The notes under the pieces: generated by a model
The model's input: only the letters and a program-made list of their open reading frames with translations
The model's database searches: none
Told to the model about the DNA's origin: nothing
Shown here: one piece after another, positions 35,685-61,400 of the stretch
How the letters are laid out: every line of letters begins with the position of its first letter
Position numbering within the stretch: the first letter of the stretch is position 1
Virus record (IMG/VR): IMGVR_UViG_3300033153_007973
Coordinates: 62,001 to 126,000 of that record
Direction: 5' to 3' (one strand)
DNA length: 64,000 bases
Position numbers and translations under genes: made by a program

Positions 35685-35700
35685 TATGTAAGGACGAGGA

Positions 35701-35732: not shown

Positions 35733-35749
35733 TTATGATATGAGATGCA

Positions 35750-42828: not shown

Positions 42829-43749
42829 ATGATAGACAAACAGAAACTAGACAAGTGGAGACGCAGATACGGCATAATCTCCGCATTGTCCACTAAGAAC
42901 GGGGATGAATATGTCCTCCGCGGTCTTCAGTTTGAGGAGATGCATAGATGGTCTTCCTTTATTACCGTATCTAAAGGTACTTCAGATACGTATGATATTG
43001 ATGATCAGATTATCGAAGATGTCCTTTCTGCATGTATCCTTCATCCTGAAGAACCAAACATATCTCTAATCATGGAAAAAGCAGGGCTTGTTGTCGAAAT
43101 GTGTAACCGCATTATGAGTGTAACACAATTCGAGAACATGGACTTTCTGATTAATTGTTATATAGATAAACTTAGATCAGCCAATATGGTATATGGAGTC
43201 ATCCGTATGCGATTGGTTGCTCTCTACGGAGTAGCAGTTCTAGAAAAGCTCAGAGATCTAAAGGCAGAAGAAATTATCGAGCTTTTAGTATATGGTGAAT
43301 ACTCCACAGAGAGTATCGGACAGTTCTCTGAGATTATTAACAAGCCAGAGATCCTTCCTAGAGATAGAAAGGGCAAGATCATAGAGAAAGAGATGATGAA
43401 TCTTCTCTTTGGAAAGGACAAACCAAACACTCCTGCACAGAACAAAAGGGAGAAGACACCACATAAACCAAAGACAATCGATGATCTTCAATCGATGATG
43501 GATAAATCACAACAAGCAAATAGAGGACCATCTGAAGAAGAGCTTCAAACAATGGATAGTAAGACACATGCACAGATGAAGAAAGACGGAAAGATACCAG
43601 ATTTCCAACAAGAAGTTAAGGGATCAATGAATGATGCAACATCAGCACTTCAGAAGAAGATTGAAGAAGATAAAGCCAAGTTTGGCACAGGTGCTGCGGA
43701 CAGAACGGGTGGATTTAGAGGAAACATACAGGATCTAATTAATAAATAA
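42829..43749 (+). CDS. putative tail assembly chaperone paralog with C-terminal extension
   Basis: N-terminal ~105 aa resemble the preceding ORF. Confidence 0.6.
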   Translation: MIDKQKLDKWRRRYGIISALSTKNGDEYVLRGLQFEEMHRWSSFITVSKGTSDTYDIDDQIIEDVLSACILHPEEPNISLIMEKAGLVVEMCNRIMSVTQFENMDFLINCYIDKLRSANMVYGVIRMRLVALYGVAVLEKLRDLKAEEIIELLVYGEYSTESIGQFSEIINKPEILPRDRKGKIIEKEMMNLLFGKDKPNTPAQNKREKTPHKPKTIDDLQSMMDKSQQANRGPSEEELQTMDSKTHAQMKKDGKIPDFQQEVKGSMNDATSALQKKIEEDKAKFGTGAADRTGGFRGNIQDLINK

Positions 43750-46700: not shown

Positions 46701-49700
46701 GGTCGTTTCCAGACTGATAAGGCTTCAGTATTAGATATAGATAGATCAATAGAACCATTATGGTCACCCTGGGGAAGAAATAGCAGAGTAAAAAGCAGTG
46801 GTGGTGATTTCCCGAGATCTGGTCTTCTTATGTCAAAGAATAAAGATGAACATGGTGACATAATGATGTCAATAAAGGAAGAACTATTTCCTAATTCTAA
46901 TGCAATGGAAGGACAGATCCAACCTATTACAATGAAGGGTGCGCAATCTTTGATGATAACCAATGCGATCAACAATGTCGGAAACATTGTTGGTATGGGA
47001 TTTAATAAGAATACAGCATCATCTACTAAATCATTTATGCAAGCAACGCTCTTCAAAAGAATATTGCCAGCTGCTGCAATTGCATCAGCGTGGCAAACTG
47101 CCGATATGGTTGCAGATGAAAGCAATCTCTTTGAGGGTACAAGTCTTGGCGAAGGTCTGAATGTATTTGTAGGAGAACAGATTGCGAAGACGCGACTTAG
47201 TATTGCGAGAATCAATGATATAACTGGAGTAACTGATAGTGCAAAGTATCTAGAAGATTTAATGCCGGGAGCAGTTAATAGCGGATTCAGTGGTGCATTA
47301 AGAGGATTTGGTATTCCAATGCTGGGAAGTGCACTTGGAATGGCTAAAGGTGGTCCCAAAGGTGGGATGATTGGTGGTGCAATTGGTGGCCTAGTCAGTC
47401 TCTTTACTGCAGGTGGACCACTAGCAACGATACAACAATTTGACATTACTAAATCCAGACGAGAATTATTAGAACAATATGCAGGTAGAGCTGAGGTGCC
47501 AATATATAAAGGTCAAGGTTGGTTATTTGGAGGAGGCTCAGTCGGTGGTATAAGACTTGATAGATATCAACCAAACTGGTTTCATAGATTAAGTTCACAG
47601 TATAGACATAGCGATGTTCTTTATGGTGACAAGTTCGAGAGAATGCGAGCATCTCTAGACCCATTTCATTACTACGAGAAACACAAATACTCACGCCCAT
47701 ATCCAGTCAAAGAGATAGCCGGCGTAAATATGCCTCTCGTTGGTAATGTAATTGGACTTGGTGGACAAATGGCTTCTGAAGAGGATCTGAAATATGGAAA
47801 TCTAGCATCATCTGTAGATAGTAATACATCATATCAATCAATTCCATTTGGTGGACAACCAAGTATATATAGTAATGAAAGACCATGGGGTGGATCCATG
47901 ATGAATGGCATAGGACTTCCAGCCGGATCCGCTCAACCAGATGCTCCTCGAGCTATTAAACCAACATCATTCCCTGCTAGAGTAAATGCAGCATTCAGAA
48001 TGTCCACAGAGTTCGCTGGTCTTCGTGGATTTATGACACAGGAAATGATCACCAATGCAAATGGCGGGATGTATCCATACGAACAGAATCCTATTCTAGC
48101 ATCAGCTAGTAGCATGACCTCTCCAAGTCGAATGTTCTGGGAACAGGAATGGGGAGACATGTTAGCTATGTCAGAAATGATCAGACGTTTTGTTCCTAAA
48201 AAGGGACAACACACAAACGAATGGAATCAGATGCCAAACATAATGCCTAAGTGGATGCCTGGTGATGATGGATTTATTAATTTTCAGGCGGGAGATCCCT
48301 ACTGCGTCAGTGCTGACACTCCAATAAATACTTCAACTGGGTATACATTGGCAGCTGATATCTGCGAAGGAGATAAGATCTATACACATAATGGAAGCTG
48401 GTTACCAGTCAAGAAGAAAGTAAGAAGAAAGATCAGGAAAGAAGAGAAGAGTTACAGTTTGAAAGTTTCTGGAGTGTGTGGAGTCGATCTTGAGTTCTCA
48501 GAAGAGCACCCATTGCTGGTAAAGAGAACATCAAAGTGTACGTTCTCGAATTCTTCTATCTGCAGACCGTTGCGAAATCTGATCAAGCCTCTCCCAGATC
48601 TTAAAGGATTCTGTGACAAGGTCAATTCCAAGAAATATAAGAAAGGGTCAGCAGGAACTCCAAAGAGAGGATGTAGTAACTCATGGGAGAATTCAGAAGC
48701 TTCCTTCGTTCCAATTAAAGATTGTAAGCCAGGAGATTATCTTGTCTACAAAATTCCAGCATCTGGCAACGATGAATCAACAATTGTTTCATATAAGCAG
48801 CTCGTTAATAGGTATCGATCACAATATGTAGATGTTGATAGAGTCCTCCACCTAGACGGAGGAATGTGCTGGGTGATCGGGCTGTACCTAGCAGAGGGAT
48901 CCACAGCAAAGGGTAAGAATGTTCCTCATCGGCTCATCTTCTCTATGTCTGATGATGAAGTTGAAGTTCTTAAACATGTCAAGATGCTTCTGTTGCAGGA
49001 ATTCAGTGACGTTCTGAGAGAAGAGTCGTGCCATATCAAGATTCGAGATAAGTCGGCAGAGCTTGTAATCACATCATACATTCTAGCGCAGATATTCAAT
49101 AATTTAGCTCCTGGTAACCTGTATCAGAAACGGATACCTCAAGTATTGTTTGATACAGACAACGATTGTCGCTTAGCATTATTATTTGGAATGATTCTCG
49201 GTGATGGATACATCTCATCCAAAGGCACAAGAATCGGATACTCTACAGCTAATGGTGATCTCGCACATGACTTTAGACGGCTGGCATTCTCACTAGGCAT
49301 CCCTGCATCATATGAGGCTAGGGAGAGAGTTGATGGAAGAACCGGCCGAAGAAACAACGCATATGAATGCAATTTCCATTCGATCAATGTATATGGAATG
49401 AATCTGGCTGACCTACATTACAAATCCGAGTTTGTTAGTTGGGGTTATAGTAGACTTCCCCACGTGGATAACTTCTCAGATGGCGAATACATATATCAAC
49501 GTATAGCACAAATCGATGAGATCGAACTCGAGTATGTGTACGGATTCGAAGTCGACGATGATGATAGTTTCTGTGTCATGGACTTTGCAACTCATAATAC
49601 AAAAATCACAAGAGGAGAGGCTCGTCTACCAGGAGCAGGTTATACATCTATGAAAGATGTTGCATTTAATTTCCCATTTGAAGCTGAATATCTTGGATTC

Positions 49701-51461
49701 AGTCAGAATGATGCTATCGGAATGTTAACTGGCCAAAAACTTCCAACAAGTCCAGATGATAGATATGACAAAATCCTTAGTGGAAAGATGGCACAGCGAA
49801 TAGCACAGAACATGTCAGCAACTAATATAAATATTAAGACTAATGAACAGGTATTTCATCCAGAGATGAACCTGTCTGGAAAAGCAGACTTAGTTGTTAA
49901 TGGTAATATCATGAAGATCAAAGCTGTCTCTAATAGAACATTCAGCAATCTAACCTCTCCTAATCCACAGCACACTTCAGAACTGAATGCACTTCTTAAT
50001 ATTTCACAGAGTAATGTCGGCTCACTCATGTATGTAAATGCTGAAACTGGAGACACAACTTCATTCAATGTATCTTCAGATCCGAATCGATTTAAACGTG
50101 ATGTAGAAACTTTAGAATCTGCAAAAGCAGTCTCTGAACATCTTATGACAAAGTATGGACCATCTATTGGTGTAGATATGGGACAAGCATATAGCAGAAT
50201 AGATCGTCTACGGATTCTGGGAGATGTCGCACCATACTCTAAGCAATTCAAAGATACACTCAAACAAGTTAAGACACTAGCACAAGTTGATAGATTAAGT
50301 CCTAGAGAACTACAAATTCTAGACGAAACTCTAGCAAGGGTTGATGAAAAGAGGGATAGATTCATATTTACAGAGAAGAGATTCAATCGCGGCAACCCAG
50401 TCACTAGTGAGGAACGACAGTATCAAGAGGGTATAAAATTGCAGTACAGTCCTTTGGAAAGAGCAGTTGGAAGCGGATGGGAAGCATTCACCCACCTCAA
50501 AAGTCCACTCCATACTAAGTTCTTAAATACATATGATCCTATCGAACAATATGAGAGAAATGAAGTCTATGGAAAACCAATTAGAATGTGGGGACAACCA
50601 TATCAGGATTTTGTCCGTCCGTATGCTACCTCTATGACGAATATCGATAGACCTATTCAAGGTGCGTTATCATTTGGAACTGGTGGCCTTATTTTTGGTG
50701 GACCGATAGGTGGTGCCATAGGTGCAGGGATAGGAACGATCTGGGGTGCATCAAATGGCGTTCGAGAAGTACCTGGATATAAACAGAAGGAACGAAGACT
50801 CATTGATACACTAGATAAAGTCCAATATGAGAAGGCCAGACGAGCATATGAACTAGATGGTGATACAGAGCAACTCAAGAAGATGAAGAATACAATGACA
50901 TGGGCATACTCAAATGCAACCACAGCAAACCAGCTTATTGCTGCCACTCCGAGACCAGAGAGAGCATTCATGGAAAGATTCATGAGAGCAGGAACGGAAG
51001 AAGAGCGAGAAAGGATTATGAGTGTTGTTCCAGATTATGTAAAACCTGTATTATCAAATGCCTGGATGGGTGGCTCTGTTGATAAGATTAAAGGAACAAA
51101 ACTCGAACGAATGCCTACCCCAGGTGAGGATTGGTCTGGATGGAAGAACGAGTTTAGAACAGAAGACATTGCAGTAAAGATGTTTAATAGAGCAGGACTC
51201 GATGCACATGATGTAGGACTTGGGTGGCAAAGTCAGATCAGGAAAATGAGCGCAACCCCCAATATTCCAGAATCATTCACAGAGGCTGTTGCTGGTGTTC
51301 CTGAAACACAATATGAACAAGTAATTAGAAGAGTAATTCCTGGAGCGACAGTCTCTGCATCAACATCAGGTGCAGGTGGCGTTAGTGTCAATCTGAGAGT
51401 AGAAGTTATAAATGAAGCAGCAATGGCAAAGAACACAGGGGTAAGAAATGCGCTATCCTAA
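43749..51461 (+). CDS. tape-measure-like protein with intein and degenerate PD-(D/E)xK domain
   Basis: 2570 aa after chaperones; glycine zippers GGPxGGxIGxxIG; internal intein. Confidence 0.75.
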   Translation: MLTRTRDRENRERLGEFSKKSRGSPIRSILKMGATMLGWGIGLKVFRGMSFKANLGLGKILASTVRKGSLTNAFVSKVSEVAKAGIRAGKYTPGQISTMKKGRGWYRKLQTTVKTSLDTMATRHLSLHDAIKTEGLAKRQYFVKSSLEKTTNRLGGMHQRYAQAKINANIPELLDDLSLKDIRFTSIVRNTKKFSGSGLGRKINEMRSTKLLEPGGDLYARARKNSGATLGGPNFGKAMAARMYRYGTDFMSYAPLFYASHRLTAVDDKKWYQPSAIADWTKWAVGTDIVFRGAMPAASIGLRKLGRGAANILENTISPTMAQKGAKFLESISKSAPIRAADLARDYTKAEIGKVGVKDVPRYTKTFFQQYRRFRGMITKDPNLHLRKGTDHLEEAMSMLSKINTRIKGSMPKHEALAQFKKETIEPPSRAMSFFNKMIRGGGLSSASRTIKPTDVGNAFNKQVTVNAGRGMISLQGQEFDVSNILPKRLMQEAGRMLGKVSIAGVRPGTWFGLKGAFRKRRPFAQLLEKDQHLGIGIGDHDGFSGSAILQKFGEQGDRLELENQIKYASVGGKGQVATLIDKGDKTSEGWAKTNTKKLYQSMIAARKEELTPTGMEKYKAALARGHNIQREGESFFLMGDKSYYSVSSGVGTKKAPVVFQTGYDVNAGQFHRWDLYAKGQGGTLSDVAMDHFGRAGTVEVDGKPIYGSSGPRLHSRMHPDKSPIANMAAKFLDKFEVGSKEERAVLGKITDLGLGRYIDSANTKVFLSDEFLFHPEFAKTTLAQDDGSAAKLIRRLDAQSHRMEKVQAQRVLKGERLITAIRGDMQGNAAGKKIESTIINRLTDDFSVVKQKAKARMTFNKANKIQLRPEMEEIIEEIASGNATSFRKLQSSVHPKLRMNKLDAYNNSAYRTWFKSEDFGVLDREMASLMDRGIITRNDKAFRALEATRIISEFDNFDVHNELINAELGKLGDYNHNTINRVIGRFQTDKASVLDIDRSIEPLWSPWGRNSRVKSSGGDFPRSGLLMSKNKDEHGDIMMSIKEELFPNSNAMEGQIQPITMKGAQSLMITNAINNVGNIVGMGFNKNTASSTKSFMQATLFKRILPAAAIASAWQTADMVADESNLFEGTSLGEGLNVFVGEQIAKTRLSIARINDITGVTDSAKYLEDLMPGAVNSGFSGALRGFGIPMLGSALGMAKGGPKGGMIGGAIGGLVSLFTAGGPLATIQQFDITKSRRELLEQYAGRAEVPIYKGQGWLFGGGSVGGIRLDRYQPNWFHRLSSQYRHSDVLYGDKFERMRASLDPFHYYEKHKYSRPYPVKEIAGVNMPLVGNVIGLGGQMASEEDLKYGNLASSVDSNTSYQSIPFGGQPSIYSNERPWGGSMMNGIGLPAGSAQPDAPRAIKPTSFPARVNAAFRMSTEFAGLRGFMTQEMITNANGGMYPYEQNPILASASSMTSPSRMFWEQEWGDMLAMSEMIRRFVPKKGQHTNEWNQMPNIMPKWMPGDDGFINFQAGDPYCVSADTPINTSTGYTLAADICEGDKIYTHNGSWLPVKKKVRRKIRKEEKSYSLKVSGVCGVDLEFSEEHPLLVKRTSKCTFSNSSICRPLRNLIKPLPDLKGFCDKVNSKKYKKGSAGTPKRGCSNSWENSEASFVPIKDCKPGDYLVYKIPASGNDESTIVSYKQLVNRYRSQYVDVDRVLHLDGGMCWVIGLYLAEGSTAKGKNVPHRLIFSMSDDEVEVLKHVKMLLLQEFSDVLREESCHIKIRDKSAELVITSYILAQIFNNLAPGNLYQKRIPQVLFDTDNDCRLALLFGMILGDGYISSKGTRIGYSTANGDLAHDFRRLAFSLGIPASYEARERVDGRTGRRNNAYECNFHSINVYGMNLADLHYKSEFVSWGYSRLPHVDNFSDGEYIYQRIAQIDEIELEYVYGFEVDDDDSFCVMDFATHNTKITRGEARLPGAGYTSMKDVAFNFPFEAEYLGFSQNDAIGMLTGQKLPTSPDDRYDKILSGKMAQRIAQNMSATNINIKTNEQVFHPEMNLSGKADLVVNGNIMKIKAVSNRTFSNLTSPNPQHTSELNALLNISQSNVGSLMYVNAETGDTTSFNVSSDPNRFKRDVETLESAKAVSEHLMTKYGPSIGVDMGQAYSRIDRLRILGDVAPYSKQFKDTLKQVKTLAQVDRLSPRELQILDETLARVDEKRDRFIFTEKRFNRGNPVTSEERQYQEGIKLQYSPLERAVGSGWEAFTHLKSPLHTKFLNTYDPIEQYERNEVYGKPIRMWGQPYQDFVRPYATSMTNIDRPIQGALSFGTGGLIFGGPIGGAIGAGIGTIWGASNGVREVPGYKQKERRLIDTLDKVQYEKARRAYELDGDTEQLKKMKNTMTWAYSNATTANQLIAATPRPERAFMERFMRAGTEEERERIMSVVPDYVKPVLSNAWMGGSVDKIKGTKLERMPTPGEDWSGWKNEFRTEDIAVKMFNRAGLDAHDVGLGWQSQIRKMSATPNIPESFTEAVAGVPETQYEQVIRRVIPGATVSASTSGAGGVSVNLRVEVINEAAMAKNTGVRNALS
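48303..49598 (+). mobile_element. intein with LAGLIDADG homing endonuclease (432 aa)
   Basis: Y/CVSADT start, SEEHPLL, IGLYLAEGS, LFGMILGDG, VYGFEV..SF..THN/T end. Confidence 0.95.
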
Positions 51462-54400
51462 TAGAATACATGCTGGCGATCATGATAATGATAGTATATT
51501 TAGTCCGATCGCTCCTCTTCTAGCAATTGGTGCTGTCAGTGCGATTGGTATGTCTGTAGCTATGATTAATCGCAATAGCATGCTTCGCTCAAAGTATTCT
51601 AGAATAGCCGCGGGGATGGATAGATATCCAACACAAGCCCTACCAAGAGTGGATAACAGTAGTGCATTCAGTGTTCTTCGTAGCGAAGCGGCCATGAATG
51701 AACTGAAAGCCATGAAGAAGCAGCGCTTAATTGATGTAGCTAGAATGGCTATTCAAAAAGAAGAAGAGGTGATCGCTAACGAGGTTAGTGATGCTCTCGG
51801 CGATCTAATGAATATCCGCTACAATCTATCTAATATAGAACTTAGAAGGGCATGGGGATCAGGCCATCCATTCGAACTAGCAGGCACTATCGCCGACACA
51901 CTCGATGAAGCCATATTAGGAATTAGTACAGGAAAACCAGATTCAATTCGAGATGCAATAACTCGCTTAAAAACAGATATAGCAACAATACAAACGCGGC
52001 CGAATACATCAGTTGAGATCAGGGCAGGAGATCTACAACAAGTTCTTGAAAGACTTCAGGGAGCTGAGAAACTATACACTGAAGATCTTCCAAAATTAGT
52101 AAACGCAGTGCAACCATTCGCTCCTGGTGCAGTTACCGCAGAAACAGCAGCAACTATCTTGGGCGGCTCACCAGCTACTTTAGCGAAAAGACTAAATGAA
52201 GAACAAATTCCCGGTGGAAAGAAAGGAAGAGTTAATCGGGAACGAATGGAACAAATAAAGATACTGACTGGATTCAAGACAGAGAAGATCAATAATAGAT
52301 TAGTTACCACACATGGACGAGTAAACTGGGTGCGAAAACTAAGGGGAATCAGTCCAACAACTGGGGCAATCATGCCCGCTGGTTCCACAATTAAAGTCAT
52401 ATATCCTCAAATTGGAGTTACTGGTAATATCGAAGATCTTGATAGAGTAGTTCAGGCTGCTGGAAAAGAATTCAGGACTCATCCATTACTGAAAGAAGCA
52501 CACAAGACACATCTCAGAATGGCTAAAAATGCAAAGGGAAATGTTAAGTTACTATTATCATCTCCAGATATGAAAACGTCACTTAAGAGATTTACAGATG
52601 GAGTAGTGGAACATCTTGGAGTAAACCCTAGAGATATTACTTTTACTCAAGAAGGAGCCAATGTTGTTTCCCTTGTTAAGTTCACTGACGCACCACCGAT
52701 GCGATTTGTCTTCCCATATGAAGAAGCAGGTCTATCAGCATCATATGGACATAATGTAATCTCAGCTTCCAAGAAATCTTTCACACATATGGGCAAAGGT
52801 GAAAAGAAGATACTGTCATCCAGCATCACTAATGGTTTTATTGATAGAATGGTTGGAAAAGGCACCGGTTCCAATGGTGTGTTCCAGAAGATGGCTACTG
52901 CAGGTGATATAAAGAATGGAGCATTCAAGGACGCAACATCAAGAGTTCTTTTCCAACGAAAAGTTAAAGGAATATTCTCTGGTGGTGGTAAAATGATGAC
53001 AGACGTAACAAATGCTTCCCCAGAGGCAATATCAAATGCAGTAACAACTTTTGAAGAGCTTCCAGGAACAGACAAAATTAGTGTATTACAAATAATGAAA
53101 CATGAAGAGGAAACTAAACTCAGTACTATTATATCTAATCCAACTGGTAATAGATTTGTAGGTCAGAAAACTGCGGTCCTCGATAAGATAAATAGTCTTC
53201 AACGACAAATCAATAAACTCCAAAAAGGATATAGTGCAGACAAAGCACTTACCGATCTTGAGCGAACCCACACTGGAAAACTCAAAGTTGCAGAAGTGAT
53301 TAACTATAATAATAATAATATCATTATTAGTGAATTAAGTAAAGACGGATTTATACCTACAACTTCTGTCGTAACGCCAGAACGAGCACTAAAGAATAAA
53401 GCGTGGGGATTGGAAGACATTAGAGAAAGATACAGTGATCCTGGATTGCAATGGATCAAAGGATCTAAATCTATAAATAATATGTATGTTTCTTCTGATG
53501 TATCAATATTTAGTCCCAGTAGCAGTGATTGGGGCAGAAGAATATCAAATTTAAAGAAGAGATCAAAACACAGACTAAAATTAACCATCGGTAAGAAAGA
53601 GGTTAATTTTAGTGGTGTTAGAATGATTAGTAGAGCAGAACAGGTTAAACGAGCAGCACTTGCAGGAGATTATAGCACAGCTCGTGGATCATATGGACAA
53701 GTTAATGTATTATTTGTTGACTCCATAGGAGGAGATGCTGGAGAACTCAGAATCACAGATGAAGTCGGTGACATGTTAGCTGGCTCAAGAGATAGAAAGG
53801 TTTCACTTAATTCTGCAGACATTAGACGGCCATTTAGTGGCATTGATCAGCAAATGACTAAAGCATTAAAGAAAGTATCTAAAGAGAATGGATTAATTGA
53901 TCTAACTGCTCCAGAGAATTGGCACGTTAGAAAGAAGCTTAATGTATTTCTTCCAAAGATAAAAGATCAAATCAAAACTCCTTACGAGGATATAAAGCTA
54001 ACTGCAATAACACATAAAGCAACGGGCAGTTATGAATTTCATTATACTGCGAATATGACAGCTGCGACGAAATCAAAGATTCTGCTTGGTGCGAACAATG
54101 AAAGATTACAAGTACATTCTACATTATCCAAAGATAGAATGTTTGAAATGCTTGCTGCTGAAATGGACTGGGATTTATCAGATGCTAATAGCTCTAAGAC
54201 TCAGTTCCTCAGAGACATAGGAGCAACAGTGGGTGCAAAAGCACCACTCAGTCTCTTCAAGAAGGGAATTGCAACACCAGGAGCAGCAGCCGGATTAGGA
54301 ATGAGCATAACAAATGCGCTAGTTTTTAGAACACTCTATAGAGTTCAAAAGATTCTGGCAGATCGTGGTCTTAGAACCATGGATGATAAACAAGCAACAA

Positions 54401-57400
54401 AGATCGTACAAGGTCTTTTGAAGATAATTGACAATCAAGGAGAACTTGGGCGAAATGTCAAATTTTCAGTTGATGATCTTCTTGGTGGAGCAACACTATT
54501 AACACACATGGGTAATAAAAGCACTAGTGATACAGCAACTCTTATAGGTAGGACTCTCAATATTAATACTATCAAAGATCCTGACACTTATAAAAAGATG
54601 ACTAAAGGTCTGGCAAAAGTGATCGAACAATTTGGACATGAGAATAAGTCGAAGAGTGCAAACACAGCAAGTGAGATTATGGATTCTATTGTAAAATTTA
54701 GAGATGGAGAGATCAGAATATTTGGTCTCTCACAGATGTATCATACTGCACCAGACATTGATGAAACTTTCAAGATGAGCTCTGGAAAGTTTGGGCCCGC
54801 GGGAGTTGGTGGTGATCCAGCTGGGACAATAACATCAATGACAGAAGTAATAGCAGCAAAATTGAGCGGGTTCAATTCACTTGCAGACAAAGCACAATTA
54901 CAAATGGCAATGGGAATGGAATACACAAAAGATTACTTTGCCATATATGCAGGTCTTCTTGAGCCTTCATTAATGGAAGAACGTCTGGCTCAGTTTGGAA
55001 CTGATAGATTCAAAAGTAAGAATCCTGGAAAACAAGAAGTACTAACTATAGATAAGCTCATGAGTATGGCAAAGAGAGATAAAGATGGAAAGAAGAACAG
55101 ATTCTTCGATCTGTTCAAAACCAGATACGGAGTCAATACAGAAGCATTTCAGGAAGCAGTTGGTGAAGGTGGTATTCTATTCGGGAAACAGAAGATTGAG
55201 ATGGCAGAAGCCATGAGTAATATACAAAGACTCGTAAATGAAAACATGAAGGAAGTGGATCTCGAAAAGTTCTCTGGTAATGTAAAGAAACAAATACAAG
55301 AGATCATGTCACTGTCTCCGCTTATTTCGTCAAAACAAGCACAATTATATCACGAAATAACTCGAGATTATAAGTTCCTTGAACTAAGTAAGAAACACCC
55401 ACTGAAAATACTGGGAGTTAATAGATCAATGTCAAGAGTTCCTATGGTTGGATTCTTTGATATTCCTACACGTGATATTCCAGATAACCTTATGGATGTC
55501 TTTGCAAATAGAGATCTATATGCTATAAACCAAAAGATTATAGAAGGTACAAATGTAGATATTGGAAAACAAGTCATAGGGAAAACAGGCGCAAAGATAG
55601 GAAAGGATATTTCAAAGAGTTCAAAGGTGCTTGTTCAAAATGCTCCACATCGCGCATTGTTAAATCTTATGACTGCGGTATCTGTGGGTGCAGATGAAGA
55701 AGTCATCGGAACATTCGCAGATAGATACACAACAGCCATACAACAATACTCACAGGCAGTAGGAAGAACTACAATTAGTCCTAGAGTTGGTGGGTCTTTA
55801 CAGACACGGCCATTACAATCTGAGGGAAAATTTAACCTCGCTATTATGAATACCAAAGCAGCAAAATATAGTCTTATGAATGCTGAGAAAGTAAAGAATA
55901 TGCCTGGTGCACTTTCTGGTACTCGGATATGGCAACCAGATCTAGGTGAGATTTGGATGGATAAGAGCACTTTTATTAATGTAATGAAGAGTGAGATGAG
56001 CGGTGATCATAGATCAATGAACAAGGCAACACAGATGGCTGATGAAATCATGGCCGAATCTAGAATATTTACGAGATTCTATAATAGAAAACCAACACTA
56101 GGACAAGACATAAGAGCACTCCGTGTCAGACTTTTTGATGCTGAGATGCTTACAGATCAAAGATTTGCTGGAAAGGTTGCATCAGGTGAGATAGCAAGAT
56201 TAAAGAAATCAATGATCCTTTCCGTGATTGATCAAAATCTTGCATCAGGTGACTTTGATGGTGATACTGGTGCAATGGTCATGGCTATGTTCAAAGGTAA
56301 GATGTCTGATAATGCAGATGTACTAGCGGATTGGGTAGTTGGTAATAGTTTCAGATATCAGACAAGCGATGGAAATATCAAAGTATTCGAGAATAGTGGC
56401 AGAACTGGTAGAGCATATATGGAGACATTCCAAGAAGTAATAGAAACATCTGCTCATAAATCAGACAATAAAAGATTATCTAATCAATTATCAAAGACAA
56501 CAGTAACAATTGAACAACAGATAGAACACGTTGCAGGAATGGTTCCAGATTCTGCAGAACGCGGACAGTTCTATACAAAAGTAAGAGATCTAGCAAAAAA
56601 GCAATATGGAGATGATCTATCACAGGCTGTAACATTTCGCACTGGAATAGGAGATATCAGATTTTGGAATAACTCAACAAGCATTCCTAGAAATCTTATA
56701 CGCGCTAAAAGAGCAGCAGAAGCAAAGATGACAGAACGAGCAACGGGCATCAATACTGCAGATATTATCGAAGAAGGAATTGAAGCAACTGAACAATTCC
56801 TTGGTGATCACGGTATGGTCTATGACCATAAAGGCATAGCACAAGAACTAAAAGCTACACATGCTGGGACAGGTGGAGGGAAAATAGCACATGCAGCATT
56901 AGCAAACATGAAAGATCAAATAGATTATTATGGTCCTTCACGGCTCATGTTAAAAGCCGGAACAGGACCCGTATATAACTTTATGCACAACCATTTATGG
57001 AACGCAGCAATTAATACCTTTGGTATTACTTCTCAACAATCAAAGGATCTTGTTAAGTGGGGAAGAGTTCCACAGCAAGCAAATATCTCTATGAAACATA
57101 TGCTTCCTGGAATTGCCGGCGATGCTGTTAATAATCTAAAGACATTCTGGACTGCTATACCAGGAAGTTCAGCACACAGAAACTCTGGATTGAAACTAAA
57201 GACAGGCAACTATGATTTTACACTTACAAAGTTTTGGGGAAATCAAGTAAAGAGAACACAACAGATAGCTAAGAAGCTTGGTGATGATAGTCTTGATGAT
57301 ATGCTAGAGAAGGTCACATCATTTGGTACAAATCCCATCGTCAAAGATGATGGAGTAATCAATCTAGGTGACTTTATACGACTTCAGGATCGAAGACTTA

Positions 57401-58272
57401 AATATATGGAACGAGGTCTTCTCGCTAAAGTATCAGATGAAGGAATAGCTGCAACACAAAAGAGTAAGTCTGTATCTGAAAAGCTCATGAACGAGTTAGC
57501 TACAGAAGATCGAGTATATAATGAGATAGAGGAATCTGGAGCTTTCTTCAGAAGTGTTGCTGGTAGTGAATCCGCAACATCTCATATCATGAATAAGAAG
57601 ATCTTTGAAGGTGGTAATCAGAGAATACATAGATCTTTTCGTGCATTATTTAGTGGAGAAAACATTGGAAAACATGTCGATGATGATATATTAAGAGGAA
57701 CACTGGGGCAAGTAGCACAGAAAATAGCACCAGCAAAGATAAAGCCGCTATTCACTCGTCCTAATGTTGCTAAATATGCAGCAGATTCAATCTCTCGAAA
57801 AGCAGCTAGACTGATTGAAGGTACTTCTCTACGGAAACATATAGATACTAAAGGAATGAAAGCCGCGGGAATGGGAATGACTTTGCTCGGCACTGCTGCA
57901 GTTGGTTTCTTGGCATTTGCTGCTGCATCCCCTGGCGGACAACCTTGGCTAGGACCAAAACCTGGATATGGTGGAGAATACAACGAACGCAGACGTCGCA
58001 AAGATGAAGAGCACATGGAGAATATCACCACCACTGGAAGATCCAAGCTCAAATTTCTAGATGGGAACTCATATCCAGATTACACACCATCCAAAACTGC
58101 TAGAATCTATATAGATCCACAGAAGAAGAGATATGCAACTGTATCACAAACCTTACGTTCTGTCCAAAATCTTGGTAATGCAGGAATCATGGACTTTAAT
58201 AAGCGACAGATGGTATCTGGTGGAACAACAATCAATAATATGTCAAGGCCGAATGGATATGGAGGATTCTAA
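51448..58272 (+). CDS. putative single-chain two-barrel (virion) RNA polymerase
   Basis: PRVGGS, NRKPTL (aa 1546), GDFDGD (DFDGD aa 1602-1606) in beta-prime order; beta-like GQVNVLF..DAGELRITDE upstream. Confidence 0.75.
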   Translation: MRYPNRIHAGDHDNDSIFSPIAPLLAIGAVSAIGMSVAMINRNSMLRSKYSRIAAGMDRYPTQALPRVDNSSAFSVLRSEAAMNELKAMKKQRLIDVARMAIQKEEEVIANEVSDALGDLMNIRYNLSNIELRRAWGSGHPFELAGTIADTLDEAILGISTGKPDSIRDAITRLKTDIATIQTRPNTSVEIRAGDLQQVLERLQGAEKLYTEDLPKLVNAVQPFAPGAVTAETAATILGGSPATLAKRLNEEQIPGGKKGRVNRERMEQIKILTGFKTEKINNRLVTTHGRVNWVRKLRGISPTTGAIMPAGSTIKVIYPQIGVTGNIEDLDRVVQAAGKEFRTHPLLKEAHKTHLRMAKNAKGNVKLLLSSPDMKTSLKRFTDGVVEHLGVNPRDITFTQEGANVVSLVKFTDAPPMRFVFPYEEAGLSASYGHNVISASKKSFTHMGKGEKKILSSSITNGFIDRMVGKGTGSNGVFQKMATAGDIKNGAFKDATSRVLFQRKVKGIFSGGGKMMTDVTNASPEAISNAVTTFEELPGTDKISVLQIMKHEEETKLSTIISNPTGNRFVGQKTAVLDKINSLQRQINKLQKGYSADKALTDLERTHTGKLKVAEVINYNNNNIIISELSKDGFIPTTSVVTPERALKNKAWGLEDIRERYSDPGLQWIKGSKSINNMYVSSDVSIFSPSSSDWGRRISNLKKRSKHRLKLTIGKKEVNFSGVRMISRAEQVKRAALAGDYSTARGSYGQVNVLFVDSIGGDAGELRITDEVGDMLAGSRDRKVSLNSADIRRPFSGIDQQMTKALKKVSKENGLIDLTAPENWHVRKKLNVFLPKIKDQIKTPYEDIKLTAITHKATGSYEFHYTANMTAATKSKILLGANNERLQVHSTLSKDRMFEMLAAEMDWDLSDANSSKTQFLRDIGATVGAKAPLSLFKKGIATPGAAAGLGMSITNALVFRTLYRVQKILADRGLRTMDDKQATKIVQGLLKIIDNQGELGRNVKFSVDDLLGGATLLTHMGNKSTSDTATLIGRTLNINTIKDPDTYKKMTKGLAKVIEQFGHENKSKSANTASEIMDSIVKFRDGEIRIFGLSQMYHTAPDIDETFKMSSGKFGPAGVGGDPAGTITSMTEVIAAKLSGFNSLADKAQLQMAMGMEYTKDYFAIYAGLLEPSLMEERLAQFGTDRFKSKNPGKQEVLTIDKLMSMAKRDKDGKKNRFFDLFKTRYGVNTEAFQEAVGEGGILFGKQKIEMAEAMSNIQRLVNENMKEVDLEKFSGNVKKQIQEIMSLSPLISSKQAQLYHEITRDYKFLELSKKHPLKILGVNRSMSRVPMVGFFDIPTRDIPDNLMDVFANRDLYAINQKIIEGTNVDIGKQVIGKTGAKIGKDISKSSKVLVQNAPHRALLNLMTAVSVGADEEVIGTFADRYTTAIQQYSQAVGRTTISPRVGGSLQTRPLQSEGKFNLAIMNTKAAKYSLMNAEKVKNMPGALSGTRIWQPDLGEIWMDKSTFINVMKSEMSGDHRSMNKATQMADEIMAESRIFTRFYNRKPTLGQDIRALRVRLFDAEMLTDQRFAGKVASGEIARLKKSMILSVIDQNLASGDFDGDTGAMVMAMFKGKMSDNADVLADWVVGNSFRYQTSDGNIKVFENSGRTGRAYMETFQEVIETSAHKSDNKRLSNQLSKTTVTIEQQIEHVAGMVPDSAERGQFYTKVRDLAKKQYGDDLSQAVTFRTGIGDIRFWNNSTSIPRNLIRAKRAAEAKMTERATGINTADIIEEGIEATEQFLGDHGMVYDHKGIAQELKATHAGTGGGKIAHAALANMKDQIDYYGPSRLMLKAGTGPVYNFMHNHLWNAAINTFGITSQQSKDLVKWGRVPQQANISMKHMLPGIAGDAVNNLKTFWTAIPGSSAHRNSGLKLKTGNYDFTLTKFWGNQVKRTQQIAKKLGDDSLDDMLEKVTSFGTNPIVKDDGVINLGDFIRLQDRRLKYMERGLLAKVSDEGIAATQKSKSVSEKLMNELATEDRVYNEIEESGAFFRSVAGSESATSHIMNKKIFEGGNQRIHRSFRALFSGENIGKHVDDDILRGTLGQVAQKIAPAKIKPLFTRPNVAKYAADSISRKAARLIEGTSLRKHIDTKGMKAAGMGMTLLGTAAVGFLAFAAASPGGQPWLGPKPGYGGEYNERRRRKDEEHMENITTTGRSKLKFLDGNSYPDYTPSKTARIYIDPQKKRYATVSQTLRSVQNLGNAGIMDFNKRQMVSGGTTINNMSRPNGYGGF

Positions 58273-58469
58273 TGGGTGCTACAATCACAGTGAATGTCAC
58301 GATAAAGAACCAGGATCCAAACGAGATCGCAGCCAGGATCAGAAGTGCCCTTGAAAGCGTAACTTCAGAGCCAGTAACGATTAACATAACAGCGAGTGAA
58401 CAACAGGTTGACAATAATGCTATCTCAGTGTACAATAGAGAAAAACAGGAGAGAGGGCAACCACGCTAG
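58272..58469 (+). CDS. 65-aa beta-alpha-beta protein
   Basis: GGAGG SD; TAATG coupling. Confidence 0.7.
   Translation: MGATITVNVTIKNQDPNEIAARIRSALESVTSEPVTINITASEQQVDNNAISVYNREKQERGQPR
58408..58436 (+). promoter_or_regulatory. intragenic sigma70-type promoter
   Basis: TTGACA-17-TACAAT upstream of ATG 58484. Confidence 0.7.
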
Positions 58470-58483: not shown

Positions 58484-61400
58484 ATGGCTATATCTGCTAT
58501 ATCCTATTCTTCATTTTCTGTCCACGAGCTGTGTAAATACCAGTTCTGGTATCAGTATTATGCACAGCTTGCTGGTGATACTGGATCCAAGGCAACTGCC
58601 ATTGGTAACGTTACTCACACAGAAGCTGAAGACATGCTTCAGGAGCTGACGAATGTCCTTCCAGACAACACAGAGATAGGCTTCACAGAGATACAGAGAC
58701 AAGAAGTCGTACAAAGATATCAGGCTATTGTGTCATCCGGTCTAAAATCACTCCAGAGCCGATACGATATAACTCCAGCAGATATACAGAGAGCACTGGA
58801 TGGACTGGATAGACTTTCAAAGAGAACATATCTAGTTGGTGTACCAAATGACCAAGGTGTATATGATAAAATCAGATGGCAAGTAATAGACAAGGAAAAG
58901 CGATTTGATAAGACAATCAGTTCTCCAGATGGCGAATATAAACTGACTGGATCTATTGACTTAATCTTGAAGCGTCTCTTGGATGCCGGTGGTAATCCTA
59001 TTGCATCACATGTCCACCAGTTTATGGATCTTAAGTCTGGAAAGAAACAGTTTGGCCCAATCAGCTGGAAATCAGAACAGGTTATGGTTTATGATATCGC
59101 ACTTGGTGACCTATATAAGGTAGACGGCATAGCACCAACTCTCCGATATGACTTCTTCCTCTTACCAGATGATCCGAATCCCCACTATACCACTGTTGTT
59201 CCAGTTGGAAACGAAGTAAGACCAGCAGATTATCTTGCTAGAAGAGACAAGGTAAATAGCAGACTTTCTGCAGCATATAAATTCTTAACAGATGGAATTC
59301 CGAACGATTCAAATGATCCAACTGTTATCATAACTGAACCCAATGATTGGTGTACCAGATGTCCGGCATATCAACATTGTCCTAATAAAGAAAATGCAAA
59401 TCTCAGAAAAGCCCCAGCTGGCGGCCTCCGCGGAGGACCATATCCTGAACTCAGAACGCTCACAGAAAAGACAGGAGCATTTGCGAAGTCTGAACTAAGC
59501 GACGAAACACTCACTGAAATAATTGAACAGATTATAAATCATGGTGGTACAGTACGTGAAGCAATCGGCCACATGAAATCAGATGAAAGAGAATTATGGA
59601 CAACAAAATATACTAAATTCATGCAGGATCATTTATCTAACAAGACAAACGATATTATTGCTGATAATAAAAGGATCAAAGAAACAATACTTCAAATTGG
59701 TGCAGTTCACATAACCGCACCAATTACTAACATCAGTCTAACAGATAGAAAAGAAGTCGTTACCGCAGACACACTACGAACAAAAGAATCATTGACGCTA
59801 AGGAAACAGACATCAAATAGAGAAGCAAATCTCACTATTATCTTTTCTGGTAAAGACCAGATCAACTATGAACTACGTCATATCTTAGCACAGTACCAGG
59901 CTTTTCCATTTACTCAGATCAGGAACAAAGAAATCACAAGGATGCTAATCCCGCTCCAGTCACATCTACCAACATACTTTGCAGTCGATCAGACTCTTCT
60001 CAGAAAGGTACTCACAGACAACAACATAAAAGACTTCTCCACACAAAAAGGAGAAGCACACAGAAAAGACCTTAAAGCAGCTAGAGATGAAGTCTATTCT
60101 AAAGTTAAATTCATGTATGCAATCCGATCAATATCAATCGCACCAGTGCCATCTCTGGTTGATACTATTGAACTCAACTTAAGGATCCAGGTCATGGACT
60201 TGGATCCTGTAAGCGAAACTGGCAGAATCAGATTTCTATATGACACACAATCCGCACTGGAACAGCTTGGTTGGTTCACGCATTTCTGCCGACTAAATGA
60301 ATATCGTAAGAATGATACAAATGGATCTAAAACCATTGTTGATACAATTATACCAAAAGAAAAAGCAATAACGATATCATTCAAGAATGCAACAAACCAT
60401 AGAAAAATTGATCTAGGTAAATATTCAGTATTAGCTATGCCTTTATATATTGGAAGAGAAGATAATACATATTTCGTAAATCCAGGAGACGATGAGTTTA
60501 TTGATAAAGATGCGTACATCTTATTGGTTAGAACTCCTAATCGAGACACAACAACAACAACGTATACTTATCTAGCATTCTTGTATACCAGAGGATTATT
60601 ACTACCGATACGAGAATCAGATACATATCTTGATAAAGGGAAGATCAAGTTACCAGATGAACGATTAGTGGGACCTATAGATTCTCTAAAAACTGCTGAT
60701 CTTTCATATGTGTTCTGTACGGATCTATCAGTATATACTGAATCTGCATATAGCAGACGCGAATTAACAGAAGCATTTAAACTGTCGTGGAATAAACTTA
60801 CAGCGGCAAATTTTAATATAGCGCAAATAAATGCACGTAATGGAGTCCTTTCTCCTAGCACATCTGATCCACGACGTGCACCCGCATGGTTGAATGCATC
60901 AAAGAGATGGAAGAATTTCAATACTAACGGTGATATCTGGCCAATCATTAACCCTACTAATGTTATTGACCCATTCCTGACAATGATTGAAATCAGAAAC
61001 CAATCAAGTAACATAGTATCAGGCATCAGTGCAGAGATAAATGATTTGCCATGGGTAAGCGAACACAGAAACATGCAAAGCAGAGGTGTCTTTGGTGAAT
61101 GGATGTATACTTCACCTGTGATGCCAGCGCGTGTATCATCTGAAAACAGCACAGGAACAAAAGATGCAACAGTAACTATTACAGGGGTGGATAAATCAAC
61201 AATACCATTATTAGTAATCCAAAGGATATTCAGAAAACTATTCCTTAATTCTGAAGTATTGTTTACAACAAATCTTGGTGCTCTTATTAAGAGAAACTTA
61301 CCAAAGACATCTGCAGACCCAAAGCCATTTATTAAAGATCTTCAGAAATCATTTGAGGCTCGGTTCCAAAATGCATACGATAATGGATTTTATGCATCAG

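What the first reader, a model, noticed from the sequence alone, without database searches (positions are those of the whole stretch)
51448..58272. 2274-aa putative single-chain two-barrel RNA polymerase with hydrophobic ends, next to the tape measure
Seen: beta-prime-like series SPRVGGS, GEIWM, FYNRKPTL (56083) and ASGDFDGDTG (DFDGD 56251-56265), paralleling KRVDYS, NRAPTLH and NADFDGD. An upstream beta-like series reads GQVNVLF..GDAGELRITDE and KSKILLGANNER, where the second catalytic Lys is not evident. TM-like segments lie near both termini (LLAIGAVSAIGMSVAMI; GMTLLGTAAVGFLAFAAA). Established: crAss-like phages package a single-chain two-barrel RNAP of similar size. Inference: a divergent virion RNAP in a myovirus tail operon, possibly membrane-anchored after injection.
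Basis: partly seen in the sequence, partly recalled or inferred. Interest (0 to 1): 0.9.

Follow-up and report, generated by a model that had tools for sequence, protein, structure and literature searches.

The report
Tape-measure-position giant protein with polymerase motif
This 2274-residue gene of an uncultured jumbo contractile-tailed phage sits where relatives have their tape measure protein and carries a conserved RNA-polymerase-type metal-binding signature, so it may be a polymerase delivered through the tail, but its fold could not be confirmed.

Summary
The protein has no detectable homologue by phmmer, Pfam, PHROGs, PDB sequences or phage GenBank.

Synteny changes the picture. The upstream 2570-aa gene is not the tape measure. 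It is a homologue of 0305phi8-36 gp145 and carries an intein. The downstream giant is the gp147-like hub. The target therefore occupies the tape-measure position (gp146).

I collected 12 positional orthologues of the long form (2074-2792 aa). BLAST detects little or no similarity between most of them. All keep a DxDxD triad 420-870 aa from the C-terminus. Eleven also keep a Pro, with R or K two residues before it, roughly 40-60 aa upstream. This is the catalytic signature of the beta-prime-type barrel.

A profile of this stretch aligns colinearly to R529-x-P531...D573-x-D-G-D577 of the gp99/YonO-like polymerase family. The score is 29.9 (P 0.006), against 12.0 ± 2.1 in 150 column shuffles, none of which reached it.

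AlphaFold2 failed (pLDDT about 40), so the fold is untested.

Best reading, at about 0.5: a tape-measure-fused virion RNA polymerase analogous to Thermus phage P23-45 gp96, here in a jumbo myovirus lineage.

The parts
51448..58272 (+). Target ORF, 2274 aa with no cysteine. It is the positional equivalent of 0305phi8-36 gp146, the putative tape measure and a virion protein.
   Evidence: ORF. Synteny between the gp145-like and gp147-like genes. Same three-gene layout in 80+ related loci. gp146 is annotated as a virion protein found by mass spectrometry. Cysteine count.
51490..51567 (+). N-terminal hydrophobic segment, aa 15-40.
   Evidence: Hydropathy above 1.4. A comparable segment at aa 13-29 occurs in 8 of 12 long-form orthologues.
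52135..52230 (+). Weak helix-turn-helix-like stretch, aa 230-261. Tentative.
   Evidence: Pfam HTH_17, E 0.11, 13 bits, below the curated cut-off.
53695..54105 (+). Present in the sequence but not supported as a barrel.
   Evidence: Positions. Smith-Waterman against E. coli RpoB 780-1110 scores 34 against a shuffle mean of 43.5 (277 of 300 shuffles score at least as high). No Pfam RNAP match.
55777..55797 (+). SPRVGGS, aa 1444-1450. Possible first strand of the beta-prime-type barrel. Loosely conserved as P-x-[IV]-R-G or P-R-x-x-G in several orthologues.
   Evidence: MAFFT alignment of 12 orthologues, by eye only and not statistically tested.
56080..56280 (+). Stretch (aa 1545-1611) that aligns to the catalytic barrel region of the gp99/YonO-like polymerase family. 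It contains NRKPTL (56083-56100) and DFDGD (56251-56265).
   Evidence: hhalign A4 against A1: columns 77-142 against 530-585, score 29.9, P 0.006. None of 150 column shuffles reaches it. The longer alignment A7 scores 39.5, P 0.0023. D131/D133/D135 are invariant and P78 is kept in 11 of 12.
57685..58026 (+). Conserved C-terminal module, aa 2080-2193. It includes the hydrophobic helix aa 2139-2160 (nt 57862-57927), followed by a GG[ES]xY[DE] motif.
   Evidence: BLASTP to the L008 orthologue, E about 1e-6. An HMM built without the target and without L008 scores the target 16.5 bits at aa 2140-2181, ranking 1 of 2001 against shuffles. Alignment.
43749..51461 (+). Upstream 2570-aa gene. It is a gp145-like virion protein, not the tape measure. 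It carries an intein at nt 48303-49598.
   Evidence: BLASTP to 0305phi8-36 gp145 and MTATph1 CDS26. Hint and LAGLIDADG domains. Intein junctions and cysteine positions.
42384..42818 (+). 144-aa tail assembly chaperone homologue (gp143 / MT24 / MT25-like).
   Evidence: BLASTP E 2.5e-6 to 5.8e-9.
58272..58469 (+). 65-aa ORF between the target and the hub gene. A small ORF recurs at this place in relatives.
   Evidence: 44-84 aa ORFs at the same position.
58484..64000 (+). Start of a giant hub-like gene (more than 3262 aa, runs off the window), with an N-terminal PD-(D/E)XK nuclease domain.
   Evidence: Open frame. Pfam PF12705, E 7.6e-10. BLASTP to gp147 and MT32.

Best explanation
The gene encodes the giant virion protein that occupies the tape-measure position in the tail operon of a 234-kb contractile-tailed phage distantly related to Bacillus phage 0305phi8-36 and Moorella phage MTATph1.

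In this phage and a small set of relatives the protein is a long form of 2074-2792 aa. Most relatives have a protein of about 1600 aa at this position. The C-terminal third of the long form carries the catalytic signature of the beta-prime-type double-psi barrel of two-barrel RNA polymerases, namely [R/K]-x-P followed roughly 40-60 residues later by D-x-D-G-D.

The most likely mechanism is inferred by analogy to Thermus phage P23-45 gp96:
1. The protein is carried in the tail tube.
2. It is expelled on sheath contraction.
3. Its hydrophobic N- and C-terminal segments help form or anchor the membrane passage.
4. The internal polymerase module transcribes the first genes of the incoming DNA, independently of the host polymerase.

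Shown here: the ORF, its position, the conservation of the triad and of R/K-x-P, the conserved hydrophobic ends, and the profile match to a known polymerase family.

Inferred only: virion location, the barrel fold, the presence of a second barrel, and polymerase activity.
For: Position:
- The upstream gene is homologous to gp145 / MT26, the downstream gene to gp147 / MT32, and the 144-aa gene to the tail chaperonins.
- The same three-gene layout occurs in L007-L099.
- gp146 is a virion protein by mass spectrometry in 0305phi8-36 (PMC2147016).

Motif conservation:
- The motif is DFDGD in the target, L008, L013 and L097. It is DFDSD in L011, DSDGD in L094 and L017, DWDGD in L096, DQDGD in L016, DTDGD in L018, DTDKD in L098 and DGDQD in L012.
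- Most of these proteins share no BLAST similarity.
- Within family A, R-E-P-N-x-Y-T is kept at 27% identity.
- In alignment A4 the three Asp are invariant and Pro is kept in 11 of 12.
- The DxDGD block is the only ungapped block shared by all lineages above the null (214 against a null maximum of 194).

Link to polymerases:
- hhalign to the gp99/YonO-like family (PF05183) aligns R-x-P and DxDGD colinearly, P 0.006 and 0.0023.
- The column-shuffle control gives 12.0 ± 2.1, maximum 22.1, with 0 of 150 reaching the real score. The reversed control gives 15.9.
- The profile's top hit in P23-45 gp96, P23-45 gp64 and E. coli RpoC is in each case their catalytic DxDGD.
- R, P and the three Asp are five of the eight invariant residues of the superfamily (PMC2919709).

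Precedent:
- A tape-measure-fused virion polymerase is known in P23-45. Outside DFDGD, its sequence also showed no detectable similarity to known RNA polymerases (PMC10770324).
- Both gp96 and the target have no cysteine.
Against: - No fold evidence. AlphaFold2 gave mean pLDDT 39.9 for the single sequence and 42.4 with the 12-sequence alignment. Foldseek on the 12-sequence model gave no match at E of 0.001 or better.
- No second (beta-type) barrel or its Lys/Asp invariants were found.
- hhalign probabilities are low (6-13%). The matches are short and driven by the motif.
- Single-sequence and subfamily profiles give nothing.
- Pfam finds no RNAP family in any of the 12 orthologues, and an HMM search of PDB sequences finds nothing.
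- The pairwise alignment to RpoC is colinear but not significant (E 3.1; z 0.55).
- The Arg is replaced by Lys in four orthologues and is absent in L008 (T). In L012 the Pro is not aligned.
- The closest relative by neighbouring gene (L007) shows no DxDxD in the 2187 aa available before its contig ends.
- 0305phi8-36 gp146, MTATph1 CDS27 and the 51-member short-form cluster lack the motif. MTATph1 CDS27 carries an exonuclease domain instead. The module could therefore be another kind of nucleic-acid enzyme.
Confidence: 0.5

Rival explanations
1. The conserved DxDxD is the metal site of a different nucleic-acid enzyme carried as cargo by the tape-measure-position protein. Candidates are a nuclease, a Toprim- or primase-like domain, or a nucleotidyltransferase. 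It would be delivered to attack host nucleic acids or defences, or to process the entering genome.
For: In MTATph1 the same positional protein carries a DEDD / RNase_T exonuclease domain (Pfam 24.2 bits; phrog_192 at 5e-11). 0305phi8-36 gp146 is homologous over that stretch. The adjacent hub gene starts with a PD-(D/E)XK nuclease domain. Enzyme modules are therefore swapped in these giant tail proteins. No second barrel was found, and no RNAP family matches. From my own knowledge, DxD followed by small residues also resembles Toprim.
Against: No Pfam, PHROG or PDB match to any nuclease, Toprim or transferase family for the target or the 11 other long-form orthologues. The invariant fifth Asp and the conserved [R/K]-x-P upstream fit the polymerase barrel. 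The only profile match obtained was with the one enzyme family compared at family-profile level, and it fell exactly on that family's two invariant elements.
Confidence: 0.25
2. The protein is only a structural tape measure or ejection protein. The acidic DxDxD loop binds a structural metal such as calcium, or makes an assembly contact, and has no catalysis.
For: The position, length, lack of cysteine and conserved hydrophobic C-terminal module are all typical of a tape-measure-like ejected protein. Everything outside the short motif diverges very fast. The second residue of the motif varies freely, and the fourth is not Gly in L011 (S), L012 (Q) or L098 (K).
Against: A purely structural loop would not be expected to keep three Asp invariant, together with a Pro and a basic residue at a fixed register upstream, across lineages in which everything else has been replaced. 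Short-form relatives function without this region, so it is an added module and not part of the ruler.
Confidence: 0.17
3. The motifs are a chance resemblance in a long, fast-evolving ORF.
For: The loose D[FY]DxD pattern occurs by chance in about a third of shuffled windows. Pairwise alignments to RpoC and RpoB are not significant.
Against: The pair of motifs arises in 2 of 200,000 shuffles. The triad recurs at the equivalent place in 11 further positional orthologues. The profile match exceeds all 150 column shuffles.
Confidence: 0.03

Closest known systems
Thermus phage P23-45 gp96, tape-measure-fused virion RNA polymerase (PMC10770324)
   Same: - A giant protein at the tape-measure position carrying DFDGD with R-x-P 47 aa upstream.
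- Hydrophobic segments in the same chain.
- No cysteine.
- Outside DFDGD, its sequence also showed no detectable similarity to known RNA polymerases.
- The proposed coupling of DNA entry and first transcription.
   Different: - gp96 belongs to a non-contractile-tailed phage and is 5002 aa long. Its polymerase is at the N-terminus (DFDGD at 779), and it has a metallopeptidase domain.
- The target belongs to a contractile-tailed jumbo phage and is 2274 aa long. Its motif is at aa 1602, 672 aa from the C-terminus, and no peptidase domain was found.
- There is no sequence similarity beyond the motif (hhalign aligns 10 columns).
- gp96 activity and structure are experimentally shown. Nothing is shown for the target.
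crAss-like phage phi14:2 gp66, virion-packaged single-chain two-barrel RNA polymerase (bioRxiv 10.1101/2020.03.07.982082)
   Same: Similar size (2180 aa), a DFDxD motif, most of the chain without recognisable homologues, and delivery with the DNA.
   Different: gp66 belongs to a podovirus and is not a tape measure. Its motif is DFDID at 1361, and both barrels were seen in the crystal structure. tblastn of the target against 50,697 phage records, a collection that would be expected to include crAss-like phages, found nothing. The target is not a member of that family.
0305phi8-36 gp99 / YonO-like single-subunit polymerases (Pfam PF05183 family; PMC2147016, PMC2919709)
   Same: This is the only known family with which a profile match was obtained. 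R529-x-P531 and D573-x-D575-G-D577 align colinearly with the target family. It occurs in the same broad phage lineage.
   Different: gp99 is about 1200 aa, lies in the non-structural arm and is readily recognised by Pfam. The match to the target family covers 55-78 columns at 6-13% probability. No gp99-like gene was found in the window or in the adjoining stretch covered by locus L001.
0305phi8-36 gp146, putative tape measure protein (PMC2147016)
   Same: It occupies the same position between the gp145-like and hub genes. It is of similar length (2537 aa), has no cysteine, and in the alignment shows a hydrophobic helix plus GG-x motif near the C-terminus. It is a virion protein by mass spectrometry.
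   Different: It has no DxDxD. It has no BLAST similarity to the target. A C-terminal profile built from gp146 and short forms alone does not detect the target. It shares an exonuclease-related stretch with MTATph1 CDS27 instead.
Corynebacterium glutamicum NCgl1702, an orphan beta::beta-prime fusion of 2169 aa (PMC2919709)
   Same: A single chain of similar size, fast-evolving, recognised only through about 40 conserved catalytic-core residues, and suspected to be of phage origin.
   Different: It was not compared here because the sequence was not fetched. There the beta part is recognisable. Here it is not.
phiKZ / AR9-type multisubunit virion RNA polymerases of jumbo phages (PMC7598289)
   Same: A jumbo phage that would bring its own polymerase in the virion.
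   Different: Those are split beta and beta-prime homologues, packaged in the head and detectable as RNAP subunits. The target is one chain in the tail operon with no detectable beta part.

Membership tests
Two-barrel RNA polymerase superfamily (eight invariant residues; PMC2919709) | Asp triad D-x-D-x-D in the beta-prime-type barrel | tested here: met
   DFDGD at aa 1602-1606. The three Asp are invariant in 12 of 12 positional orthologues.
Two-barrel RNA polymerase superfamily | Invariant Arg and Pro (R-x-P) a few tens of residues upstream of the triad | tested here: met
   In the target, R1547-K-P1549 lies 55 aa upstream. Across the family, Pro is kept in 11 of 12. Two residues before it stands R in 6, K in 4 and T in 1. 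The twelfth, L012, has R at the aligned column but no aligned Pro. The motif aligns to R529 / P531 of the gp99 family.
Two-barrel RNA polymerase superfamily | Second (beta-type) barrel with two invariant Lys and one Asp | tested here: inconclusive
hhalign of A7, family A and family B against the gp99 family gives no upstream hit. No further common block was found. Absence is not proven, because divergence is extreme.
Two-barrel RNA polymerase superfamily | Double-psi beta-barrel fold around the triad | tested here: inconclusive
   AlphaFold2 gave mean pLDDT 39.9 and 42.4. Foldseek against the PDB gave no hit at E of 0.001 or better and TM-scores of about 0.1. The models are too poor to decide either way.
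Two-barrel RNA polymerase superfamily | Statistically significant sequence or profile similarity to a known member | tested here: inconclusive
   hhalign P 0.006 and 0.0023, with 0 of 150 column shuffles reaching the score, but probability only 6-13% and 55-78 columns. Pfam, the PDB HMM search and BLASTP were negative.
Two-barrel RNA polymerase superfamily | Template-dependent RNA synthesis | not testable with these tools
   This needs biochemistry.
Tail tape measure / ejected tail-tube protein | Gene position after the tube and chaperone genes and before the hub or baseplate | tested here: met
   The order is sheath, tube paralogues, chaperone homologue, gp145-like gene, target, small ORF, hub-like gene. 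The same order is seen in 0305phi8-36, MTATph1 and more than 80 metagenomic loci.
Tail tape measure / ejected tail-tube protein | Sequence homology to a recognised tape measure family | tested here: not met
   No Pfam or PHROG tape-measure family matches. There is no BLAST similarity to gp146. Only the C-terminal module is shared, and only with other long forms. The gp146 assignment is itself based on length and position.
Tail tape measure / ejected tail-tube protein | Presence in the virion, with length proportional to tail length | not testable with these tools
   The phage is uncultured. Virion presence is known only for gp146 of 0305phi8-36.
crAss-like gp66 virion polymerase family | Detectable homology to gp66 orthologues | tested here: not met
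   tblastn against the phage collection found no match. phmmer against 1.84 billion representatives found only the query itself.

The most novel reading that the evidence does not exclude
A previously unrecognised family of polymerase modules is embedded inside the tape-measure-position protein of a clade of jumbo contractile-tailed phages. This would make tail-delivered, tape-measure-fused virion RNA polymerases a recurrent solution and not a peculiarity of Thermus phage P23-45. More broadly, this positional protein would act as a vehicle for lineage-specific nucleic-acid enzymes: a polymerase-type module here, a DEDD exonuclease in MTATph1 and 0305phi8-36, and none in the roughly 1600-aa short forms.
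Probability: 0.4. Interest if true: 0.8.

Novelty: new variant of a known kind. Interest (0 to 1): 0.6.

Why it matters
If the module is a polymerase, fusion of a virion RNA polymerase to the tape measure would no longer be a single case in a thermophilic siphovirus. It would also occur in contractile-tailed jumbo phages, with a different domain order and no sequence relation to gp96.

That would imply independent or very ancient solutions to the same problem, namely transcribing the first genes while the DNA is still entering and before host defences or the host polymerase act. It would also add a very divergent branch to the two-barrel polymerase superfamily.

It would further give a practical rule for finding hidden virion enzymes: inspect fast-evolving giant tail proteins for short invariant catalytic motifs, using synteny in place of sequence search.

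Even if the module is another enzyme, the finding stands that different lineages carry different nucleic-acid enzyme domains in the same tail-delivered protein. That is useful for understanding what these phages may deliver to their hosts.

Tried and rejected
Searches with the target itself, all negative:
- Pfam on the whole protein and on ten 250-300-aa pieces at E up to 10.
- PHROGs.
- PDB sequences.
- tblastn against 50,697 phage records.
- Word-indexed search of 5.8 billion proteins.
- Full phmmer of aa 700-1899 against 1.84 billion representatives.
- IMG/VR scan, which found only the source contig.

Direct comparisons:
- BLASTP to the giant tail proteins of MTATph1 and 0305phi8-36 found nothing.
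- BLASTP and Smith-Waterman to E. coli RpoC gave the expected colinear alignment, but it was not significant.
- hhalign of the single target sequence against the gp99/YonO-like family found nothing.
- Subfamily-only profiles against that family found nothing.
- An HMM of the 12-orthologue motif region against the PDB found nothing.
- Pfam on all 12 orthologue regions found no RNAP.

Structure:
- Two AlphaFold2 runs failed, and Foldseek on the second model was uninformative.

Attempts to enlarge the family:
- The alignment of all nine C-terminal neighbour sequences was too divergent to scan with.
- A family A scan of IMG/VR found only itself.
- The metagenome scan added three loci.

Ideas considered and dropped:
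- HAD phosphatase motif I, because the fifth residue is an invariant Asp and not Thr.
- An EF-hand-type calcium loop, because the Gly and Glu positions do not fit.
- A beta::beta-prime fusion with bacterial spacing.
- A stop-codon-recoded region downstream of the target, considered because no ORF was listed there. It is in fact one giant ORF running off the window.

Full report
**1. The observation**

The window has an uninterrupted ATG ORF at 51448..58272 on the + strand, encoding 2274 aa.

- SPRVGGS, aa 1444-1450
- GEIWM, aa 1500-1504
- NRKPTL, aa 1546-1551 (nt 56083-56100)
- DFDGD, aa 1602-1606 (nt 56251-56265)
- GQVNVLF / GDAGELRITDE, aa 750-772
- KSKILLGANNER, aa 875-886

The protein has exactly two strongly hydrophobic segments, at aa 15-40 and 2139-2160, and no cysteine at all.

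On chance: in 200,000 shuffles of the protein, D[FY]DGD arose 423 times. It arose together with R.P[ST]L 20-120 residues upstream only twice. A loose D[FY]DxD pattern alone is common in shuffled windows (32 of 100). The pair of motifs is therefore non-random, but DFDGD alone would not be.

**2. The protein has no detectable homologue in ordinary searches**

All of the following found nothing but the protein itself:
- Pfam, on the whole protein and in pieces
- PHROGs
- PDB sequences
- tblastn against 50,697 phage records
- a word-indexed search of 5.8 billion proteins
- a full phmmer scan of aa 700-1899 against 1.84 billion representatives

The source is a 234,008-bp IMG/VR contig, and the window begins at contig position 62001.

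**3. Context**

The window is the structural arm of a contractile-tailed jumbo phage. It contains terminase, portal, protease-like and major capsid genes, a sheath gene (32452-34893), tube paralogues, and then a run of giant genes.

The nearest cultured relatives by terminase and sheath are Moorella phage MTATph1 and Bacillus phage 0305phi8-36.

An all-against-all BLASTP of the tail-operon proteins settled the gene order:
- The 144-aa protein is a tail chaperonin homologue.
- The upstream 2570-aa protein is a homologue of 0305phi8-36 gp145 and MTATph1 CDS26.
- The giant ORF that starts at 58484 and runs off the window is a homologue of the hub proteins gp147 and MT32.

The target therefore lies exactly where 0305phi8-36 has gp146. 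That protein is a 2537-aa virion protein assigned as the tape measure on the basis of length and position (PMC2147016).

**4. Orthologues found through synteny**

Direct searches fail, so I searched with the conserved C-terminus of the upstream gene. I then fetched the DNA downstream of its homologues.

The three-gene layout (gp145-like gene, giant gene, hub) is kept in more than 80 loci. The middle protein falls into two classes:
- Most are about 1550-1750 aa. They form one 51-member BLAST cluster and have no DxDxD.
- The loci whose neighbouring gene is closest to the window's have a long form of 2074-2792 aa.

Twelve distinct long forms, the target included, carry a DxDxD 420-870 aa from the C-terminus:

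| Motif | Loci |
|---|---|
| DFDGD | target, L008, L013, L097 |
| DFDSD | L011 |
| DSDGD | L094, L017 |
| DWDGD | L096 |
| DQDGD | L016 |
| DTDGD | L018 |
| DTDKD | L098 |
| DGDQD | L012 |

These proteins fall into small clusters with no BLAST similarity between clusters.

Roughly 40-60 residues upstream there is a Pro in 11 of the 12. Two residues before it stands R in six, K in four and T in one. L012 has the R but no aligned Pro. Within the L011 / L094 / L096 family, R-E-P-N-x-Y-T is kept at 27% identity.

In the 12-sequence alignment the three Asp are the only invariant columns. A search for any ungapped 9-residue block shared by ten lineages found only the DxDGD block above the null (214, against a null mean of 184 and maximum of 194).

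The aspartates are conserved in orthologues. The Phe is not, and the Gly is kept in only 9 of the 12.

**5. Is it a polymerase barrel?**

R, P and the three Asp are five of the eight residues reported as invariant in all two-barrel polymerases (PMC2919709).

I built a 26-sequence profile of the 0305phi8-36 gp99 / YonO-like family, Pfam PF05183. The single target sequence gives no hit against it. The 12-orthologue profile behaves differently:
- Its one and only hit aligns columns 77-142 to family columns 530-585. R-x-P falls on R529-x-P531 and DxDGD on D573-x-D575-G-D577. The score is 29.9, P 0.006, probability 6%.
- 150 column-shuffled versions score 12.0 ± 2.1, with a maximum of 22.1. The reversed alignment scores 15.9.
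- A longer alignment gives score 39.5 and P 0.0023 over 78 columns.
- The same profile's top hit in P23-45 gp96, P23-45 gp64 and E. coli RpoC is each time their catalytic DxDGD. gp96 and gp64 themselves show R-x-P 47 and 40 residues upstream of theirs.

This evidence is real but narrow. It is motif-centred, and the hhalign probabilities are low.

**6. What failed**

Smith-Waterman of aa 700-950 against E. coli RpoB 780-1110 scores below the shuffle mean, and the best alignment does not use the quoted strings.
- No second barrel emerged from hhalign of the longer region or of the two alignable subfamilies.
- Pfam sees no polymerase family in any of the 12 orthologues.
- An HMM search of PDB sequences is empty.
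- AlphaFold2 gave mean pLDDT 39.9 for aa 1391-1750 alone and 42.4 for aa 1412-1671 with the 12-sequence alignment. Foldseek on the latter returned nothing meaningful.

One further caution concerns L007. Its neighbouring gene is the closest to the window's, at 44-45% identity. Its middle protein shows no DxDxD in the 2187 residues available before the contig ends. Long forms reach 2792 aa with the motif up to residue 2058, so this is not decisive.

**7. Other architecture**

- An N-terminal hydrophobic segment at aa 13-29 occurs in 8 of the 12 long forms. A C-terminal one, about 100-135 aa from the end, occurs in 5.
- The target's C-terminal stretch aa 2080-2193 is BLAST-similar to L008 (E about 1e-6).
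- An HMM of this module built without the target and without L008 finds the target at aa 2140-2181. It scores 16.5 bits and ranks first of 2001 against shuffles.
- A profile built from gp146 and short forms alone does not find the target. Homology to gp146 therefore rests on position, size, absence of cysteine and a visually similar C-terminal helix plus GG motif.
- The target, gp145, gp146, MT26, MT27, the orthologues L008, L011, L012 and L013, and P23-45 gp96 all lack cysteine. Five of the other long forms have one or two. The hub proteins have 10-13.

**8. Interpretation**

The best-supported reading is a tape-measure-position virion protein that has acquired a polymerase-type catalytic module in one clade. 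The module lies in the C-terminal third.

The closest known thing is P23-45 gp96. It is a 5002-aa tape measure whose N-terminal part is an experimentally proven, structurally atypical two-barrel polymerase. It transcribes pre-early genes, and apart from DFDGD its sequence also showed no detectable similarity to known RNA polymerases (PMC10770324).

By analogy, the target would be expelled through the tube on contraction. Its hydrophobic ends would engage the membrane, and it would transcribe the entering DNA. I put this at about 0.5.

The main rival, at about 0.25, is that the triad belongs to another nucleic-acid enzyme. MTATph1's positional equivalent carries a DEDD exonuclease domain that 0305phi8-36 gp146 shares. 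The adjacent hub starts with a PD-(D/E)XK nuclease domain. These giant tail proteins clearly exchange enzyme modules.

A purely structural metal-binding loop (about 0.17) and chance (about 0.03) are less likely, given the conservation pattern.

**9. Novelty and score**

A literature search found only P23-45 as a tape-measure-fused polymerase.

If confirmed, this would be a new variant of a known kind. It differs in tail type (contractile, jumbo phage) and in domain order, it has no sequence relation to gp96, and it occurs in a clade where the module is present in some members and absent or replaced in others.

I therefore score interest at 0.6 and not 0.9.

Noticed in passing
window 48303-49598 (inside ORF 43749-51461): An intein of 432 aa (Hint plus LAGLIDADG) interrupts the gp145-like giant virion protein. 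The junctions read GDPY|CVSADTP and FATHN|TKI. All 13 cysteines of the 2570-aa protein lie inside the intein, so the spliced protein has none. Several homologues (P0039, P0041, P0061, P0062, P0066 and others) also carry LAGLIDADG or intein domains.
   Followed up: partly
window 3314-8657: A cluster of 20 tRNA genes on the + strand covers 15 amino acids, including four tRNA-Leu. It explains the ORF-poor stretch there.
   Followed up: no
window 58484-64000 and beyond (L001 17037-26822): The hub-like gene downstream is more than 3262 aa and begins with a PD-(D/E)XK nuclease domain (Pfam E 7.6e-10). It first looked like 5.5 kb without genes, because ORFs running off the window are not listed.
   Followed up: partly
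L003 30512-34441 (MTATph1 CDS0027) and L004 22623-30236 (0305phi8-36 gp146): The tape-measure-position protein of MTATph1 has a DEDD / RNase_T exonuclease domain at aa 962-1065. gp146 aa 1635-1816 is homologous to MTATph1 CDS0027 aa 1002-1173, a stretch that overlaps that domain.
   Followed up: partly
target, gp145, gp146, MT26, MT27, the L008, L011, L012 and L013 orthologues, P23-45 gp96 and gp64: Cysteine is completely absent from these very long proteins (up to 5002 aa), while the neighbouring hub proteins have 10-13. This may be a signature of proteins that must travel unfolded or metastable through the tail tube.
   Followed up: partly
window 52135-52230 (target aa 230-261): A stretch resembles an excisionase / MerR-type helix-turn-helix (Pfam HTH_17, E 0.11, below threshold). 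If real, it would be a DNA-binding element in the same chain as the polymerase-like motif.
   Followed up: no
window 34953-37890: Three consecutive tube-related paralogues are present. The first two match the 0305phi8-36 tube protein gp140 and its paralogue gp141, and the third matches gp142 / MT23. PHROGs labels the family (phrog_9206) 'major head protein', and the same label appears in the product annotations of the MTATph1 and 0305phi8-36 records. The 0305phi8-36 note says tail tube.
   Followed up: partly
L007 58-4656: The relative L007 has several free-standing LAGLIDADG and HNH homing endonuclease genes just upstream of its tail genes, in addition to the intein-type LAGLIDADG in its gp145-like gene. 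This suggests heavy homing-element traffic in this phage group.
   Followed up: no
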